From IMG/VR virus record IMGVR_UViG_3300034073_003340, positions 310,001-374,000 of that record: DNA of 64,000 nucleotides; one strand, 5' to 3'. Positions within the stretch are counted from its first letter, which is position 1. Every line of letters begins with the position of its first letter. Positions 273 through 15,958 of this stretch are shown piece after piece. The notes beneath the pieces were generated by a model that saw only the letters and a program-made list of their open reading frames with translations, made no database searches and was not told where the DNA came from. The translations under genes were made by a program, and so were the position numbers.

Positions 273-348
273 GCTTGTTCCTTTTGCTCTAGTGAGAACA
301 CCAGTAGAGCAAGGCAACGCAGGTAACAATATCTTTTTTGCTCAAAAG

Positions 349-379
349 AAAACCCCCGGCCTTTGAGACCGGGGGTTTT
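349..379 (-). terminator. intrinsic terminator at the end of the tRNA array
   Basis: aaaacccccgg/ccgggggtttt inverted repeat directly after the last tRNA. Confidence 0.75.
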
Positions 380-464
380 GGCGGAAAGCTAGAGACTCGA
401 ACTCTACCCCTTGCGGAGCACATTCCTTAGCAGGGAAGTCCAGACCCTGTCTGGTTAACTTTCC
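379..464 (-). tRNA. tRNA-Ser(GCT)
   Basis: Cloverleaf, loop CT-GCT-AA, long variable arm, G73, CCA encoded. Confidence 0.9.
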
Positions 465-570: not shown

Positions 571-659
571 TGGAGGAAGACTAGGGACTTGAACCCTACA
601 CCCATAAGGGTGCCCACTGGTTTCGAATCAGGTCCGGGGCCCTCCCCGGTTAATCTTCC
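571..659 (-). tRNA. tRNA-Ser(CGA)
   Basis: Loop TT-CGA-AA, long variable arm, CCA, imperfect anticodon stem. Confidence 0.8.
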
Positions 660-668
660 ATGGTATTT

Positions 669-816
669 AGTTGAGGGCAAGTATCCGTATGGCATCTTTC
701 CGTTGCGTTTGCCAATTCCGCCACTTCCCGTCACAGAGTCGGGAAGCCAGGACTCGAACCTGGAAGACTAAAAGTCCACAGTTTTCTTTGATAAGCCAAA
801 CAATCGGCCCTCAACT
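669..816 (-). ncRNA. Y-RNA-like element A enclosing a permuted class II tRNA-like module
   Basis: AGTTGAGGGC-CGA...TTATC / CTTGCCCTCAACT; inside, T-arm plus CTTCCCG precede CGGGAAG plus D-arm. Confidence 0.75.
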
Positions 817-892: not shown

Positions 893-1135
893 ATATGACA
901 CATTTTATGATGTGTAGCTATCAACAATCTTAGCAATTGCTCGATGTCTTTGTCTATATTCTTTTGCCGAAGCATTGGCTTCAAAATCCGTTGAATGGTA
1001 GGTTCCCATAACCAAGGTCCTACAATCCTCGCTGATCATAAACCATCGGAAGCGCCCACAAGGCTGAAGCAACACTTCGATCATTTTTCACCAATAATAT
1101 GAGTGGATTATGCTCATATTTACCTGGTGTTAGTT

Positions 1136-1274
1136 TCAACGGGCAAGTTGCGAAAAGGATGTTTTTCGGTGTCCTAACCACTAGACGAACCCCGCATAAT
1201 ATAGAGCGGGGTATGGGATTCGAACCCATGTAACCGGCGTGATAAGCGATAACCCTTATCAGTCGGCCCGTTGA
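1136..1274 (-). ncRNA. Y-RNA-like element B enclosing a permuted tRNA-Asp-like module (ATC)
   Basis: TCAACGGGC-CGA...GGGTTATC / CTTGCCCGTTGA; ACCCCGC and GCGGGGT form a 7-bp acceptor stem in reversed order. Confidence 0.8.
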
Positions 1275-1682: not shown

Positions 1683-1693
1683 GTTGTATTTAT

Positions 1694-1764
1694 TGGCGCT
1701 CCGAGTAGGATTCGAACCTACAATAGCAGTCTTAGGAGGACCGCTCCCATCCATTGGCCGGAGC
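1694..1764 (-). tRNA. tRNA-Arg(CCT), short D-arm
   Basis: Loop CT-CCT-AA, T-arm, CCA; only 71 nt. Confidence 0.8.
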
Positions 1765-2061
1765 ATCTTTCCAAGTCAACTTAAACAACATAGCGTCTTT
1801 GGGATCCACAAAGCTGAAGCCTCGACGATGATCATCTGTGTAAAGCTTATAGGTAAAATACTTGATCTTGCGCTCTTCCAGCCAGTTGATCAATATCATC
1901 CATATGGGAGGATCCGCATATGTGTCCAACACATCTATTTCCAACATAAAGGTGACCTGTAGTTTTTCCGCAAGATCACCTAGATTGGCACGATTGCGAT
2001 TGGCTCGTATTTTCATACGAGTGTGCATATAAGGATTATGTTTGAATGGGCCTTTGAACAT
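1732..2061 (-). CDS. small protein, DAxLFKLxW family
   Basis: ORF track; C-terminal FVDPKDAMLFKLTW; tail overlaps the tRNA-Arg gene. Confidence 0.7.
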   Translation of the reverse strand: MFKGPFKHNPYMHTRMKIRANRNRANLGDLAEKLQVTFMLEIDVLDTYADPPIWMILINWLEERKIKYFTYKLYTDDHRRGFSFVDPKDAMLFKLTWKDAPANGWERSS

Positions 2062-2066
2062 TCCTT

Positions 2067-2094
2067 ATTCTAACATAGAGTAGAGAAATGTCAA
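2067..2094 (-). promoter_or_regulatory. sigma70-like promoter
   Basis: TTGACA-N16-TAGAAT just upstream of ORF 2061. Confidence 0.5.
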
Positions 2095-5418: not shown

Positions 5419-5491
5419 ATATGGGCAAGTTGGTGGCCAGGGGCTTGGTTCAAAGTTTGAGTTTGATAACCCTGAGCCGTCCGGCCCATAT
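5419..5491 (-). ncRNA. Y-RNA-like element G (no tRNA module)
   Basis: ATATGGGC-CGG...GGGTTATC / CTTGCCCATAT. Confidence 0.7.
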
Positions 5492-8793: not shown

Positions 8794-8870
8794 TGGCCCT
8801 CTGGACGGGACTCGAACCCGCCTCGACCCGGCGTGACAAGCCAGCGGCGTCACCCGACGCCTCCCAGAGG
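8794..8870 (-). tRNA. tRNA-Asp(GTC)
   Basis: CTGGC-TTGTCAC-GCCGG arm, G73, CCA. Confidence 0.9.
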
Positions 8871-9742: not shown

Positions 9743-9753
9743 ATGTAGAGACC

Positions 9754-9813
9754 TGAGCAAGTTGATGCGGCGAGGGGTTCATCACCAAAAGATAACCCTC
9801 ATGCTTCGGCTCA
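9754..9813 (-). ncRNA. Y-RNA-like element C (no tRNA module)
   Basis: TGAGC-CGA-AGCATGAGGG-TTATC...CCCTCG...CAACTTGCTCA. Confidence 0.7.
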
Positions 9814-9819
9814 AATCTA

Positions 9820-9899: not shown

Positions 9900-10015
9900 A
9901 TATGAGCAAGTTTTGTAAAGGACTTTCCCAGTTGCCTGGGGTGATGGATTTGAACCATCTAGTTTTGATTTGAAGTCAAAAGTTTTTCCGATAACCCTTT
10001 ACTATCGGCTCATAT
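9900..10015 (-). ncRNA. Y-RNA-like element D with a TCA anticodon arm, T-arm and loop-closed acceptor
   Basis: ATATGAGC-CGA...GGGTTATC / CTTGCTCATAT; TTTTGA-CTTCAAA-TCAAAA arm. Confidence 0.75.
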
Positions 10016-13166: not shown

Positions 13167-13294
13167 CGATGAGCAAGGAGGTGTGCTAGGAGATTGACTA
13201 GGTCCTACCCCGGCCCTCATTGTGGACCGGCCGAGACTCGAACTCGGATCGTTTGTTTCACAGACAAAGATAACCTAACGCTATCGGCTCATCG
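13167..13294 (-). ncRNA. Y-RNA-like element E enclosing a permuted tRNA-His-like module (GTG)
   Basis: CGATGAGC-CGA...GGTTATC / CTTGCTCATCG; TTTGT-CTGTGAA-ACAAA arm, T-arm, CCGGTCC then GGGCCGG. Confidence 0.8.
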
Positions 13295-13295
13295 G

Positions 13296-13378
13296 TGCGG
13301 ATGACTGGACTCGAACCAGCACGCCACTAGGGCACCGCCTTCTGAGGACGGCAAGTCTACCAATTTCATCACATCCGC
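13296..13378 (-). tRNA. tRNA-Leu(CAG)
   Basis: CT-CAG-AA, long variable arm. Confidence 0.9.
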
Positions 13379-13400
13379 ATGTAAAAGGCTTGTGAACCTT

Positions 13401-13477
13401 TGGTGCTCCCCGTGGGACTCGAACCCACACTGAACGGAGTTTGAACCCGCTGACTCTACCAATTGGCCTAGAGGAGC
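13401..13477 (-). tRNA. tRNA-Leu(CAA), short variable arm
   Basis: TT-CAA-AC, CCA. Confidence 0.85.
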
Positions 13478-13496
13478 ATGACACTGGCTAACAGCT

Positions 13497-13581
13497 TGGT
13501 GCGGATAGTGGGACTCGAACCCACACGCCCTAAGGCACAGGCCTCTCATGCCTGCAAGTCTACCAGTTTCATCATATCCGC
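13497..13581 (-). tRNA. tRNA-Leu(GAG)
   Basis: AT-GAG-AG, long variable arm, CCA. Confidence 0.88.
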
Positions 13582-13652
13582 ATAGTCAACAAAGTGTCAA
13601 TATTAACGACCTTTACTCTTACCTCCCGGAACGGTCAAGCGGGCGACTTTGT

Positions 13653-13727
13653 TGGTGCCCCATCCAAGAATCGAACTTGGATCTACGCCTTACCAAGGCG
13701 TTATAATAACCATTATAATAATGGGGC
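13653..13727 (-). tRNA. tRNA-Thr(GGT)
   Basis: ACGCC-TTGGTAA-GGCGT, CCA. Confidence 0.92.
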
Positions 13728-13728
13728 A

Positions 13729-13803
13729 TGGAGCAGGTAGAGGGGATCGAACCCTCTTCTACGGTTTGGAAGACCATCATAATAACCAATATACTATACC
13801 TGC
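13729..13803 (-). tRNA. tRNA-Gly(TCC)
   Basis: CT-TCC-AA, U73, CCA. Confidence 0.9.
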
Positions 13804-13804
13804 A

Positions 13805-13881
13805 TGGTGTCCATGGAGAGATTCGAACTCTCACTGTCTGCATTCTAAGCGCAGTGCCTCTTCCGATTGGGCTACATGGAC
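13805..13881 (-). tRNA. tRNA-Leu(TAG), short variable arm
   Basis: CT-TAG-AA, CCA. Confidence 0.88.
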
Positions 13882-13882
13882 A

Positions 13883-13980
13883 TGGCAGAGAGCAGAGGAC
13901 TTGAACCTCAAGCGCATGTAGGGGTAAATGGCGCTCACATGATTTTCATCAGCCCAGCGACCTCGCTGGTTTTACTCTCT
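13883..13980 (-). tRNA. Ser-like tRNA (TGA uncertain), degenerate anticodon arm
   Basis: G73, CCA, very long variable arm, 7-bp D-stem; anticodon loop does not fit 7 nt. Confidence 0.5.
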
Positions 13981-13981
13981 A

Positions 13982-14058
13982 TGGTAGATGATCAGGGGTT
14001 CGAACCCTGGACCTACGGTTTAAGAGACCGTCGCTACTACCAACTGAGCTAATCATCC
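13982..14058 (-). tRNA. tRNA-Lys(CTT)
   Basis: ACGGT-CTCTTAA-ACCGT, CCA. Confidence 0.92.
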
Positions 14059-14180
14059 ATAAGGGGCGCCACTAGCTTGTTCGTTTCCCTGGCGTGCCAT
14101 GGCGCCCAGCCAACAGCACTAGGGAGAAACCTTGCTTAAGGGTTTCGTAAGCATTGCCCCGTCCGACAATACTTGGAACT

Positions 14181-14254
14181 TGGATGCCCATCGAGGATTC
14201 GAACCTCGGTTGACCGGTTCAGAGCCGGGTCTCTTACCGTTAGAGGAATGGGCA
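14181..14254 (-). tRNA. tRNA-Gln(CTG)
   Basis: CT-CTG-AA, CCA. Confidence 0.9.
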
Positions 14255-14268
14255 ATAAGAGATAAAGT

Positions 14269-14342
14269 TGGTAGCCCCAACGGGGATCGAACCCGTTTCG
14301 CCGCCTTGAGAGGGCAGCAGCTTACCAATAGAAGATGGGGCC
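14269..14342 (-). tRNA. tRNA-Glu(CTC)
   Basis: CT-CTC-AA, CCA. Confidence 0.88.
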
Positions 14343-14343
14343 A

Positions 14344-14431
14344 TGGAGGACCAGGTGGGGTTCGAACCCACAAGGGACTTTCATCCGTCGCATTAAGAGT
14401 GCGGTGAGCCAACCAACTGCTCAACTGGTCC
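14344..14431 (-). tRNA. tRNA-Lys(CTT) with a long variable arm
   Basis: CT-CTT-AA, GGA-TGAAAG-TCC variable stem, CCA. Confidence 0.8.
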
Positions 14432-14436
14432 ATGAT

Positions 14437-14573
14437 CAACGGGCAAGTGGTGAAAAGGATGTTTTTCCCGGCTTTACCAATTTGCCTATCCCCCGTCAAT
14501 GGTCGGGGGAGGAGGACTTGAACCTCCAAACAGGGTCTCCTAATGACGATAACCCTTATCAATCGGCCCGTTG
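14437..14573 (-). ncRNA. Y-RNA-like element F enclosing a permuted tRNA-Leu-like module (TAG)
   Basis: CAACGGGC-CGA...GGGTTATC / CTTGCCCGTTG; TCCCCCG-A-CCA-TTGA-CGGGGGA. Confidence 0.8.
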
Positions 14574-14648
14574 GTCTAGGTGAGAGGATTCGAACCTCCA
14601 ATCCCTTGCTCCCGAAGCAAGTGCCTTACCAGATTAGGCCACACCTAG
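14572..14648 (-). tRNA. tRNA-Pro(CGG)
   Basis: CTTGC-TTCGGGA-GCAAG, CCA. Confidence 0.92.
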
Positions 14649-14679
14649 ATGATAGTTTACCGACATTTCGGTCAATATC

Positions 14680-14756
14680 TGGCTCCCAATGTAGGACTCG
14701 AACCTACAGCATCGACGTTAACAGCGTCGCTCCCCTACCGACAGGGACCATTGGGA
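14680..14756 (-). tRNA. tRNA-Asn(GTT)
   Basis: CGACG-CTGTTAA-CGTCG, CCA. Confidence 0.9.
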
Positions 14757-14780
14757 ATGGAATAAACCACTTTGGTTTAT

Positions 14781-14852
14781 TGGTGGAGCATAAGAGAATC
14801 GAACTCTTCCTACCGCGGTGCAAGCGCAGCGACTAGACCCACTAGATGCCCC
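14781..14852 (-). tRNA. tRNA-Ala(TGC), short D-arm
   Basis: G3:U70, CT-TGC-AC, CCA, 72 nt. Confidence 0.8.
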
Positions 14853-14920
14853 AAAAGGGATTGCCCGCCCCATCGGGTTTGTCCGCATTAGGCTAACTTT
14901 CAGGACTTGTTAGCTAACAG

Positions 14921-14989
14921 TGGATATCTTGGACTCGAACCATTTTCTCCAGCTAGACGCTGGCGCATTACCATATATGCTACCAATCC
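14921..14989 (-). pseudogene. degenerate tRNA with a 5-nt loop containing CTA
   Basis: CCAGC-GTCTA-GCTGG, D-arm and T-loop present, weak acceptor. Confidence 0.45.
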
Positions 14990-14992
14990 ATT

Positions 14993-15069
14993 TGGTCGGG
15001 ATAGCAGGACTCGAACCTGCGACCTCTTGTCCCCCAGACAAACGCGCTACCAGGCTGCGCTATACCCCG
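14993..15069 (-). tRNA. tRNA-Pro(GGG)
   Basis: CT-GGG-GG, C1-G72, CCA. Confidence 0.92.
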
Positions 15070-15506
15070 ATGATTTGGCCTTTTGTTTGTGATATGCGAA
15101 ATATATTCCCTGGCACTTCAGGGTGATCCGCATGAGGAAGGATTACTCCTTTCCCCTGTGCCTAAAGAACGGCGCATCACTACACCGTCCAATTTTTACT
15201 CCCACGTTCTCTCCGTGGTTTCATCCTTGGCCCGCCCATATGGGTTTATTTTAAGTGGCTATCCCGCAGTCTCGTTCCGCATATACCACTTGACAATTCA
15301 GGGAACCTGCACTAGGCATTTTCCTTGAAAGGTCGATCTATATCACACTAAGAAACTTTCGTTCCTTGGTGCTACGTCGTTGTGCCTTGTGGACATCAAC
15401 TCCGTTTTTGAGTTTAGCAGCTTCTTTTTGCTGTGTCAACAACTTTTTTGTTGCTGCTAAACTTTTTTGTTTGTGCCTTCTGCGCTAGCATCGGGCGGTT
15501 AAAAGG

Positions 15507-15566: not shown

Positions 15567-15770
15567 TTATCCTCCGTGTCCCTCCTGGAAACTGGCCCCG
15601 GTCGTATCAAGATTCGCAGGCTTATTATAACCGACGAGTGTCCCGACTGGGCGGGTAATTTGTTCGCTACGCTGCCATTCGGCGCCCATAGCGGAGGCGG
15701 TAAACAACACGGCTTTCAGGCCGGCCTTTCCGCATTCCATATGGGTTCCAATATGCGACATAGAAATCAA
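15567..15770 (-). CDS. possible small late protein
   Basis: TATAAATA upstream, GAGG SD and a downstream terminator; no recognisable motif. Confidence 0.35.
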   Translation of the reverse strand: MISMSHIGTHMECGKAGLKAVLFTASAMGAEWQRSEQITRPVGTLVGYNKPANLDTTGASFQEGHGG

Positions 15771-15958
15771 TTACCTCAAATTCTGTGATGCCCGAATTGG
15801 CATCTGTGTTTCTATTTATACTGAACGATTCATTCGTCAAGCACAAAATGACCACAAAGCAAAAAAGTTTTCTACTTTGCTTCCAAGGGGCTTAATGTAC
15901 TCCTTGGACTTTAGTTGCAAGCCCTTAGAAAAATAAATTTCAAAGCCTACAACCTTTG

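What the first reader, a model, noticed from the sequence alone, without database searches (positions are those of the whole stretch)
1136..1274. Element B rejoins into a complete tRNA-Asp with an ATC anticodon
Seen: joining the 5' half (...GGAC-A-CCG) to the sequence after TTATC (GC-TTATCAC-GCCGG...) gives a perfect CCGGC/GCCGG stem, a 7-nt loop and a full cloverleaf. The normal tRNA-Asp at 8794-8870 has the near-identical arm CTGGC-TTGTCAC-GCCGG. Established: A34 anticodons are rare in bacteria outside Arg. Inference: a real tRNA gene was captured with no nucleotide lost, which fits either splicing-like maturation or recent fusion.
Basis: partly seen in the sequence, partly recalled or inferred. 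Interest (0 to 1): 0.7.

Follow-up and report, generated by a model that had tools for sequence, protein, structure and literature searches.

The report
Phage Y RNA with tRNA-like module
The "rejoinable tRNA-Asp" is real in the sequence, but it is best read as one of nine YrlA-type Y RNA genes of a 436-kb phage: a small RNA whose ends form a Ro60-binding stem and whose middle copies a whole tRNA in permuted order.

Summary
On the minus strand of window 1137-1273, a tRNA 3' half (anticodon loop onward), a 10-nt loop and a tRNA 5' half lie in permuted order. Joining CCG to GC gives a full cloverleaf with loop UUAUCAC.

The interpretation needs changing. The 26-nt and 31-nt flanks are not intron remnants. 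They form the conserved Ro60-binding helix of Y RNAs: an 8-bp helix, a bulged C, then GA opposite UU. The same flanks enclose a different permuted tRNA at 14437-14573. About 40 related elements occur in other large phage contigs, and more than 120 stretches in bacterial genomes.

- A covariance model built from the phage elements hits the published mycobacteriophage YrlA at 71 bits.
- The phage encodes a Ro60 orthologue (TROVE + vWA_Ro60).
- Ro60 is present in all 8 further element-bearing viral records that are at least 90% complete.
- The phage has no tRNA-splicing endonuclease and no RtcB. No bulge-helix-bulge motif can be drawn, and no junction contigs were found.
- Close orthologues carry AUC, GUC or UCU, so the A34 loop is not conserved.

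Verdict: a new member of the known YrlA family. Unusual points are nine copies, eight of them in the tRNA array, complete split anticodon arms, and an anticodon-loop swap between near-identical orthologues.

The parts
1137..1273 (-). Whole element B: a YrlA-type Y RNA gene of 137 nt
   Evidence: Model R1 scores 124.1 bits over the full model. RNA-library contigs of relatives match only 1135/1136-1274 and diverge on both sides. MFE is -51.9 kcal/mol, z = -3.5.
1263..1273 (-). 5' strand of the Ro60-binding helix: CAACGGGC (1273-1266), bulged C (1265), GA (1264-1263)
   Evidence: It pairs with 1137-1146. Most of the 8 pairs covary across 29 homologues with few or no breaks. The motif resembles GGUCCGA of metazoan Y RNAs and GNCGAA of YrlA (PMC4201824).
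1248..1255 (-). GGGUUAUC motif: GGGU pairs with AUCC at 1157-1160, and UUAU is the conserved YUAY of YrlA
   Evidence: It was required by the search pattern, so its invariance in alignment A2 is not independent. Independent support: a GGUUAUC variant in phage Phosso. The inner helix covaries (columns 19-22 with 132-135). Mycobacteriophage Rizal YrlA has GGUUACC with a compensating partner strand.
1234..1247 (-). Lower part of the split anticodon arm: GC (1247-1246), loop UUAUCAC (1245-1239), 3' strand GCCGG (1238-1234)
   Evidence: The loop is unchanged in five 90-95% identical relatives in sequencing runs and in L019. It is AUGUCAA in L015 and L028, and CUUCUAA in L043.
1213..1233 (-). Variable loop UUAC (1233-1230) and T arm AUGGG-UUCGAAU-CCCAU (1229-1213)
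   Evidence: The T stem covaries. C48 pairs with G15 as a Levitt pair. Across the family this pair is G:C in 13 and A:U in 10 of 29 elements.
1189..1212 (-). Closed acceptor stem: ACCCCGC (1212-1206), 10-nt closing loop (1205-1196), GCGGGGU (1195-1189)
   Evidence: All 7 pairs covary across the family. Variation among relatives, including indels, clusters in the closing loop. Several relatives have UCCA where this copy has UCUA.
1167..1188 (-). UC (positions 8-9), D arm GUCU-AGUGGUUA-GGAC (1186-1171), A26 (1170), and CCG (1169-1167), the upper 5' strand of the anticodon stem
   Evidence: A14 and the GG of the D loop are present in 29 of 29 homologues, and U8 in 26 of 29.
1137..1166 (-). 3' strand of the Y stem: AAAAAC, AUCC (1160-1157), UU (1146-1145), GCCCGUUG (1144-1137)
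14437..14573 (-). Paralogue (element A): near-identical flanks (1 and 2 differences) around a different, tRNA-Pro-like permuted module with loop AUUAGGA and an encoded ACCA
   Evidence: R1 scores 120.9 bits. Rfam YrlA RF02553 scores 23.2 bits over the full model, E 0.007. It lies directly between tRNA-Pro (14572-14648) and tRNA-Lys (14344-14431).
13167..13294 (-). Third tRNA-module Y RNA, with hairpin UUUGU-CUGUGAA-ACAAA
   Evidence: R1 scores 75.1 bits and it was not in the training set. ARAGORN mis-calls part of it as tRNA-His at 13222-13298.
671..814 (-). Fourth tRNA-module Y RNA
   Evidence: R1 scores 70.8 bits and it was not in the training set.
9900..10015 (-). Y RNA with a reduced tRNA module: anticodon-like hairpin, 4-bp T arm, no D arm
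   Evidence: R1 scores 44.4 bits; sequence.
9751..9816 (-). Short Y RNA without a tRNA module (YrlB-like)
   Evidence: R1 scores 33.3 bits.
5419..5491 (-). Short Y RNA without a tRNA module (YrlB-like)
   Evidence: R1 scores 37.1 bits; sequence.

Best explanation
Element B is a gene for a YrlA-type Y RNA.

Inferred production: it is transcribed from the minus strand together with the neighbouring small ORFs, tRNAs and other Y RNAs.

Shown by covariation: its 5' and 3' ends pair into the conserved bulged helix, and its middle folds as a tRNA. The acceptor stem is closed by a loop. The Y stem leaves the tRNA body through the 5' strand of the anticodon stem, between positions 29 and 30, so a complete anticodon arm remains.

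Inferred by homology with X. laevis, D. radiodurans and Thermus phage Ro60-Y RNA complexes: the bulged helix binds the phage's own Ro60 protein.

Inferred from Salmonella and M. smegmatis YrlA: the tRNA-like module is handled by tRNA enzymes. RNase P can cut at the 5' side of the 7-bp acceptor stem, and a CCA end can be made or exposed.

Inferred: the RNP serves RNA surveillance, repair or decay during infection, for example by tethering Ro60 to a partner such as host PNPase.

On this reading the RNA is not rejoined into a translating tRNA-Asp(AUC).
For: 1. Ro-binding helix. An 8-bp outer helix, a bulged C, and GA opposite UU are present in 29 aligned homologues with extensive compensatory change.
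2. Rfam. The whole element aligns end to end with nematode stem-bulge RNA RF01656, which I recall to be a Y RNA homologue (my own knowledge, not checked here), at 25.3 bits, E 0.005. Paralogue A aligns with YrlA RF02553 over the full model.
3. Cross-hit. Model R1, built only from large-phage elements, hits the published-type YrlA next to the Ro gene of mycobacteriophage Rizal at 71.1 bits, E 9e-16.
4. Ro60. The phage encodes Ro60 (TROVE 139.8 bits, vWA_Ro60 178.6 bits), with another Y RNA 592 nt upstream on the same strand. TROVE is found in 21 of 28 other element-bearing viral records and in 8 of 8 that are at least 90% complete. It is found in only 362 of 50,697 GenBank phage records.
5. Layout. 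The order V/anticodon hairpin, T, closed acceptor, D, together with the YUAY motif and the covarying 15:48 pair, matches the published YrlA description (PMC4201824; bioRxiv 10.1101/312249).
6. Discrete unit. Relatives in four further runs match only 1135/6-1274, in unrelated flanking sequence.
Against: - Rfam YrlA does not report B at E <= 10, and A is far below the gathering score (23.2 against 69). The control mycobacteriophage YrlA also fails, at 36.1 bits.
- B lies about 296 kb along the record (about 140 kb if the genome is taken as circular) from the Ro60 gene. The published search criterion was within 4 kb.
- Binding to Ro60, expression, ends and processing were not observed. The sequencing runs gave only contigs, and the libraries may contain DNA.
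- The complex prediction was not run by the tool.
- Retention of a canonical 7-nt loop with U33 and A37 in nearly all members is not explained by a pure Ro60-tether role.
Confidence: 0.85

Rival explanations
1. Permuted pre-tRNA. The Y stem is cut out at both borders and the ends are ligated into a circle. RNase P and a 3' nuclease then open the acceptor loop, giving a working tRNA with anticodon AUC.
For: - The cloverleaf is complete.
- U33 and R37 are kept in 30 and 33 of 35 family members.
- 7-bp acceptor stems are the rule in the phage elements parsed, although the parser looked for a 7-nt pairing partner. NCCA follows the stem in 11 of 29.
- The borders of the conserved flanks coincide exactly with the tRNA borders in A and B.
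- The phage has an Rnl2-type RNA ligase and a CCA-adding enzyme.
- Wang et al. raised this possibility for YrlA (bioRxiv 10.1101/312249).
Against: - The phage has no tRNA-splicing endonuclease and no RtcB.
- I could draw no bulge-helix-bulge. Both borders face one internal loop next to the GGGU/AUCC helix (inspection).
- The break position varies from 0 to 5 nt into the stem.
- The flanks carry a protein-binding helix conserved far beyond what excision would need.
- Anticodon and body disagree. Class I bodies carry Leu- or Ser-type anticodons.
- Near-identical orthologues carry AUC, GUC or UCU.
- This copy has UCUA, not UCCA.
- The phage already has two tRNA-Asp(GUC) genes.
- No junction contigs appeared in eight runs.
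Confidence: 0.05
2. A Y RNA whose anticodon arm is the working end. The tRNA module acts as an anticodon-specific decoy, sensor or bait, for example for host anticodon nucleases or tRNA-modifying enzymes, and presents them to Ro60 and its partners. This is a reading of function that is compatible with the Y RNA identity.
For: - Canonical anticodon-loop form is kept (U33 in 30 of 35, A37 in 27 of 35, A38 in 30 of 35), while the triplet varies widely. There are 20 different triplets in 35 phage elements.
- Window B and L043 differ at 5 of 7 loop positions but at only 5 of 131 elsewhere (Fisher 1.3e-5). The L043 loop CUUCUAA equals the loop of the phage tRNA-Arg(UCU).
- Large phages carry 4-9 copies with different modules inside tRNA arrays.
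- Bacterial copies are much less diverse. The triplet GCC, within a loop consensus CUGCCAA, accounts for 18 of 39.
Against: - This is purely comparative and no target is known.
- Loop swaps could come from gene conversion with tRNA genes without selection.
- The parser that defines the loops is fitted to the model.
- No defence or counter-defence gene context was examined.
Confidence: 0.15
3. A recent rearrangement or decaying pseudogene. A tRNA gene was scrambled by duplication and deletion or by insertion of foreign DNA, and has no function of its own.
For: - It sits in a dense tRNA array with several degenerate tRNA-like sequences.
- The closing loop has lost the CCA that relatives keep.
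Against: - The same architecture is conserved with compensatory changes across dozens of phages and bacteria.
- Orthologues at 80-99% identity keep every stem.
- Tertiary-contact nucleotides are retained.
Confidence: 0.02

Closest known systems
YrlA (Y RNA-like A) of bacteria and mycobacteriophages (Chen et al. 2014, PMC4201824; Wang et al. 2018, bioRxiv 10.1101/312249; Rfam RF02553)
   Same: - The 5' and 3' ends form a Ro60-binding stem with a GNCGA-type motif and the YUAY motif.
- The middle is a tRNA mimic in the order hairpin, T arm, closed acceptor stem, D arm.
- The Levitt pair covaries.
- Ro60 is encoded in the same genome.
- Reciprocal model hit to mycobacteriophage Rizal YrlA: 71 bits. 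Rizal YrlA shows the same split stem, CU|CUC-AUUGCAA-GAGAG.
   Different: - It lies far from the Ro60 gene and inside a tRNA array.
- There are nine Y RNA genes in one genome.
- Both strands of the Ro-binding helix are recognisable, as in animal and Deinococcus Y RNAs.
- It is below Rfam's gathering score.
- Salmonella YrlA lacks an anticodon loop, and the authors drew the hairpin of other YrlAs as a variable arm. Here that hairpin plus 3 nt after the D arm form a canonical 5-bp anticodon stem with a 7-nt loop.
Metazoan Y RNAs and nematode stem-bulge RNAs (Rfam RF00019, RF01656)
   Same: Ro60-binding helix with a bulged C followed by GA, a GUUAUC-like motif on the 5' strand and ACUUG on the 3' strand. 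RF01656 gives an end-to-end alignment at 25.3 bits.
   Different: Animal Y RNAs have an internal loop rather than a tRNA module. RF00019 gives no hit, and the RF01656 hit is below its gathering score of 38.
Circularly permuted tRNA genes of Cyanidioschyzon merolae, some green algae and Thermofilum pendens (as cited in bioRxiv 10.1101/312249: Soma 2007, Maruyama 2010, Chan 2011)
   Same: The 3' half lies upstream of the 5' half, the acceptor end is closed by a short linker, and the leader and trailer pair with each other.
   Different: Those precursors form a bulge-helix-bulge that a splicing endonuclease cuts, and they yield the cell's working tRNA. Here there is no such motif or enzyme, the paired leader and trailer form a conserved Ro60 site, and the break position is not fixed.
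Thermus phage phiLo Ro60 with Yrl1/Yrl2 (PMC12135203) and D. radiodurans Yrn1/Yrn2
   Same: Phage-encoded Ro60 with its own Y RNAs. Yrn2, tRNA-Asp and Yrn1 are co-transcribed, which parallels Y RNAs embedded among tRNAs here.
   Different: As described in the passages read, phiLo Yrls are stem-bulge-stem RNAs next to the Ro60 gene; no tRNA module is mentioned there. Yrn1 has a different arm order.

Membership tests
YrlA-type Y RNA | The 5' and 3' ends pair into a stem carrying the Ro60 recognition motif (GNCGAA N0-1 G near the 5' end; GGUCCGA with a bulged C in animals) | tested here: met
   B has GGGC-C-GA-CUG. The family shows GCCGA followed by A, U or C. The 8-bp helix plus bulged C plus GA/UU covaries in 29 sequences. 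In B the sixth motif base is C rather than A.
YrlA-type Y RNA | tRNA-like domain in the order V hairpin, T arm, closed acceptor stem, D arm, with the conserved YUAY motif | tested here: met
YrlA-type Y RNA | Nucleotides for tRNA tertiary contacts, including a covarying 15:48 pair | tested here: met
   A14 in 29/29, GG in the D loop in 29/29, U8 in 26/29, T loop UUCRANU. The 15:48 pair is G:C in 13 and A:U in 10 of 29. B has G15:C48 and A has A15:U48.
YrlA-type Y RNA | Encoded within about 4 kb of a Ro60 gene on the same strand | tested here: not met
   B is at G000 311137-311273 and Ro60 at 13338-15140. A different Y RNA (15732-15885) does sit 592 nt upstream of Ro60. In smaller related phages the copies are next to Ro60.
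YrlA-type Y RNA | A Ro60 (TROVE) protein in the same genome | tested here: met
   Co-occurrence in 8 of 8 further complete records.
YrlA-type Y RNA | Reaches the gathering score of Rfam RF02553 | tested here: not met
   B has no hit at E <= 10. A scores 23.2 against 69. The positive control, mycobacteriophage Rizal YrlA, also fails at 36.1, so the model is too narrow for phage members.
YrlA-type Y RNA | Homology to an accepted YrlA by a covariance model | tested here: met
   R1, built without it, hits Rizal YrlA at 71.1 bits, E 9e-16, over the full length.
YrlA-type Y RNA | Bound by Ro60; modified or cut by tRNA enzymes (TruB, DusA, RNase P, CCA addition) | not testable with these tools
Only contigs of sequencing runs were available.
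Permuted tRNA gene matured by splicing | Leader and trailer form a bulge-helix-bulge with the two cut sites in 3-nt bulges 4 bp apart | tested here: not met
   By inspection, both borders open into one asymmetric internal loop (UAUC opposite AAAAAC) beside the GGGU/AUCC helix.
Permuted tRNA gene matured by splicing | A splicing endonuclease and a matching ligase are available | tested here: not met
   PF01974 is absent and RtcB is absent from the phage. An Rnl2-type ligase is present. The host is unknown.
Permuted tRNA gene matured by splicing | Junction-spanning or circular RNA molecules exist | tested here: inconclusive
Permuted tRNA gene matured by splicing | The anticodon is conserved among orthologues and consistent with the tRNA body | tested here: not met
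   B-type orthologues carry AUC, GUC or UCU. A-type orthologues carry UAG or UGG on a class I body.

The most novel reading that the evidence does not exclude
In large phages the YrlA family has expanded into sets of Ro60-docked RNAs that each copy a whole tRNA, anticodon arm included. The anticodon loop would be the evolving, specificity-giving part. It can be swapped outright between near-identical orthologues (AUC, GUC, UCU). These RNAs would then act as anticodon-specific decoys or baits in the conflict over tRNA cleavage and repair. Less likely, they would be a reserve of permuted pre-tRNAs that can be opened and rejoined.
Probability: 0.15. Interest if true: 0.75.

Novelty: new member of a known kind. 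Interest (0 to 1): 0.45.

Why it matters
Y RNAs and Ro60 have been known for decades, yet the role of the tRNA-like module of bacterial and phage Y RNAs is still open.

This locus shows three things:
- A 436-kb phage carries nine Y RNA genes, eight of them woven into its tRNA array.
- The module is a complete tRNA, with a canonical anticodon arm interrupted by the Ro60-binding stem.
- The anticodon loop can be exchanged while the rest of the RNA stays about 96% identical.

This gives a concrete handle on what the module recognises. It also gives a cultivable test system: Sinorhizobium phage Phosso has 3-4 copies.

The finding is useful for annotation too. ARAGORN calls one such RNA a tRNA-His by default, and a second only at lowered thresholds. 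Rfam's YrlA model misses the phage members.

Tried and rejected
- The strict two-flank pattern found nothing in viral contigs. A 24-nt flank pattern found only the closest relative. The looser pattern anchored on CCGA, GRGTTATC and the T loop worked.
- Searching for relatives through the ORF next to B found none. Megablast of the region against GenBank phages found none.
- I used ARAGORN on systematically shifted junctions to pick the true join. It accepted very many wrong joins, so I replaced it with an explicit pairing parser and a chimera control.
- Hammerhead and hairpin ribozyme readings of the flanks (CUGAUAA, GAAA, N|GUC) were considered by eye and dropped. The core positions are not conserved between A, B and their orthologues, and Rfam gave no ribozyme hit at E <= 10.
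- Single-sequence MFE folds give local hairpins (GAUAAG with CUUAUC; CGAAAA with UUUUCG). By eye these are not conserved in homologues, and the consensus fold of 29 homologues does not contain them.
- Rfam Y_RNA RF00019 gave no hit.
- The Ro60 plus RNA complex prediction was not folded by the tool and is not used as evidence.
- The two reviews by Sim and Wolin are not held in the library. The supplements of PMC4201824 are not held either. I therefore could not see how those authors drew the phage hairpins.

Full report
**Setting.** The window is bases 310001-374000 of a 435,856-bp IMG/VR virus record with direct terminal repeats. The first 16 kb of the window, on the minus strand, hold an array of about 50 tRNA genes. 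Rfam confirms 41 of them.

**The observation.** The minus strand of 1273-1137 reads in this order: a 26-nt flank, then GC, the loop UUAUCAC and GCCGG. A 4-nt variable loop, a canonical T arm and the acceptor 3' strand follow, then a 10-nt loop and the acceptor 5' strand. Next come UC, a canonical D arm, A and CCG, and last a 31-nt flank. Joining CCG to GC restores a perfect 5-bp anticodon stem and a 73-nt cloverleaf with anticodon AUC. No other join restores the stem. The remainder of that tRNA is unrelated, and none of the phage's 59 tRNAs is a close copy of the module. ARAGORN's call on the rejoined sequence is not strong evidence by itself, because ARAGORN also accepts many shifted junctions.

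**A second copy.** The genome holds a second element at window 14437-14573. Its 26-nt and 31-nt flanks are nearly identical to those of B (1 and 2 differences). Its 81-nt middle is a different permuted tRNA, with a tRNA-Pro-like body, loop AUUAGGA and an encoded ACCA. The tRNA borders coincide exactly with the ends of the conserved flanks in both copies. The flanks are therefore a functional module, not debris.

**What the flanks are.** The two flanks pair as an 8-bp helix (CAACGGGC with GCCCGUUG), followed by a bulged C, then GA opposite UU. A second short helix (GGGU with AUCC) is followed by UAUC opposite AAAAAC at the junction with the tRNA.
- The same scan aligns the paralogue with YrlA RF02553 over the full model, at 23.2 bits, E 0.007.
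- Both hits are below the gathering scores. The accepted YrlA of mycobacteriophage Rizal also reaches only 36.1 of 69 bits, so the Rfam model is narrow.

The published description of YrlA fits point by point (PMC4201824; bioRxiv 10.1101/312249). It lists a Ro60 motif near the 5' end, a conserved YUAY, and then a hairpin, T arm, closed acceptor stem and D arm. [quoted passage not shown]

**The protein partner.** The phage encodes a 600-aa Ro60 orthologue at G000 13338-15140, with TROVE at 139.8 bits and vWA_Ro60 at 178.6 bits. A further Y RNA lies 592 nt upstream of it on the same strand. Among 28 other viral records that carry such elements, 21 have a TROVE gene, including all 8 that are at least 90% complete. 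In GenBank phages, Ro60 occurs in 362 of 50,697 records.

**Family and covariation.**
- A pattern anchored on CCGA, GRGTTATC and the T loop found 40 distinct elements in viral contigs, mostly of 100-480 kb. These include Nostocales with tandem copies, Chloroflexota and Deinococcus lacus.
- My parser fits 35 of the 40 viral elements to the same plan. RNAalifold on a MAFFT alignment of 29 elements supports four stems with compensatory changes in 17 of 24 pairs: the outer helix, the inner helix, the T stem and the closed 7-bp acceptor stem.
- The split anticodon stem is 5/5 paired in 26 of 35 elements, with many different sequences. In chimeras that combine halves of different elements and are parsed the same way, 29% are 5/5 paired.
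- The number of stem nucleotides lying on the 3'-half side varies from 0 to 5.
- Tertiary-contact nucleotides are kept: A14 in 29/29, GG in the D loop in 29/29, U8 in 26/29, and 15:48 as G:C or A:U in 23/29.
- A covariance model built from the 29 elements finds members it was not trained on. In the window these are 13167-13294 (75 bits), 671-814 (71), 9900-10015 (44), 5419-5491 (37) and 9751-9816 (33). Elsewhere they are G000 307932-308063 (80 bits), the copy beside Ro60 (28.5), 3-4 copies in Sinorhizobium phage Phosso (72-103 bits), and the Rizal YrlA (71.1 bits, E 9e-16).
- The Rizal RNA shows the same split stem and a 7-nt loop.
- Large phages carry 4-9 copies. Smaller phages carry 1-3, next to Ro60.

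**The anticodon loop.** Across the phage elements the loop keeps its tRNA form: U33 in 30 of 35, a purine at position 37 in 33 of 35, and A38 in 30 of 35. The triplet varies widely. For the B type, UUAUCAC is unchanged in L019 and in five 90-95% identical relatives seen in sequencing runs. The more distant orthologues L015 and L028 have AUGUCAA (GUC). L043 is about 96% identical elsewhere but has CUUCUAA. That is 5 of 7 loop positions changed against 5 of 131 elsewhere (Fisher 1.3e-5). CUUCUAA equals the loop of the phage tRNA-Arg(UCU). The loop seems to be a site of replacement rather than drift. Bacterial members are much less diverse: the triplet GCC, within a loop consensus CUGCCAA, accounts for 18 of 39.

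**Maturation by rejoining.**
- The phage has no tRNA-splicing endonuclease and no RtcB. It does have an Rnl2-type ligase and a CCA-adding enzyme.
- The two borders do not lie in a bulge-helix-bulge.
- Eight sequencing runs gave no junction contig. These were assembled contigs, some probably from DNA, so absence is not shown.
- Those runs do show that the element is a discrete unit. Contigs from four runs match only 1135/6-1274 and then continue into unrelated sequence. Their differences cluster in the closing loop, where several restore UCCA. One variant carries a compensatory G-C to A-U change in the acceptor stem.

**How it is probably made.** This part is inferred.
- A strong sigma-70-like site at 2094-2067 on the minus strand, and a hairpin followed by a U run at about 376-340 (seen by eye), bracket a unit of small ORFs, tRNAs and Y RNAs.
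- Element A abuts the CCA end of tRNA-Pro and lies 5 nt from tRNA-Lys. Ordinary tRNA end processing would release it.
- B starts 1-2 nt after the stop codon of the ORF at 1275-1682.

**Conclusion.** Element B is a YrlA-type Y RNA (confidence 0.85). The reading as a rejoinable tRNA gene is not excluded, but it lacks every feature that could be tested here (confidence 0.05). The open point, and the one worth following, is why the whole anticodon arm is kept and why its loop is swapped between orthologues.

Noticed in passing
window 13222-13298 and 738-813 (minus strand): ARAGORN calls a tRNA-His(gtg) at 13222-13298 by default, and another at 738-813 at lowered thresholds. Both are the 5' parts of Y RNAs (13167-13294 and 671-814) and not tRNA genes. 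Rfam's tRNA model does not report them.
   Followed up: yes
window 1693-1775 (minus strand): A tRNA-like sequence with good T arm, acceptor stem and CCA but an oversized (about 9-nt) anticodon loop. It overlaps the start of the ORF listed at 1275-1766. ARAGORN finds it only at lowered thresholds (Arg cct, anticodon at position 40), and Rfam does not find it.
   Followed up: partly
window 379-464 and 571-659 (minus strand): Two further class II-like tRNA sequences, one Ser(gct)-like. Default ARAGORN and Rfam miss them and they appear only at lowered thresholds. The tRNA array holds several degenerate or unusual members.
   Followed up: partly
L043:7712-7848 compared with window 1137-1273: A near-identical orthologue (about 96% outside the loop) has its anticodon loop replaced, UUAUCAC by CUUCUAA. 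The new loop equals that of the phage tRNA-Arg(UCU). This could be a loop swap by conversion or by selection.
   Followed up: partly
G000:C1:15732-15885 (outside the window) and the matching places in L005, L006, L008, L009: A ~155-nt Y RNA without a T loop lies upstream of the Ro60 gene on the same strand. It is conserved in position in four relatives.
   Followed up: partly
G000:C1:34802-35281 and 380474-380839 (outside the window): The phage encodes an Rnl2-type RNA ligase and a CCA-adding enzyme, but no RtcB and no tRNA-splicing endonuclease.
   Followed up: partly
Genome-contig loci L056-L134 (e.g. L098, L117): Nostocales genomes carry tandem arrays of 2-4 such elements spaced about 120-280 nt apart. 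In the parsed subset of bacterial elements the loop consensus is CUGCCAA and acceptor extensions are long.
   Followed up: partly
window 920-1252, run X15 contig: A 384-nt contig from an RNA library (depth 103) of a ~91% identical relative covers the small ORF and most of element B. It then continues with a different 5' strand that would not pair with the unchanged 3' strand. This may be a chimeric contig or a variant.
   Followed up: no
window 2067-2094 and about 340-376 (minus strand): A promoter-like site (TTGACA, 16 nt, TAGAAT; 11 of 12 matches) and a GC-rich hairpin with a U run lie here. Together they may bound the transcription unit that contains element B.
   Followed up: no
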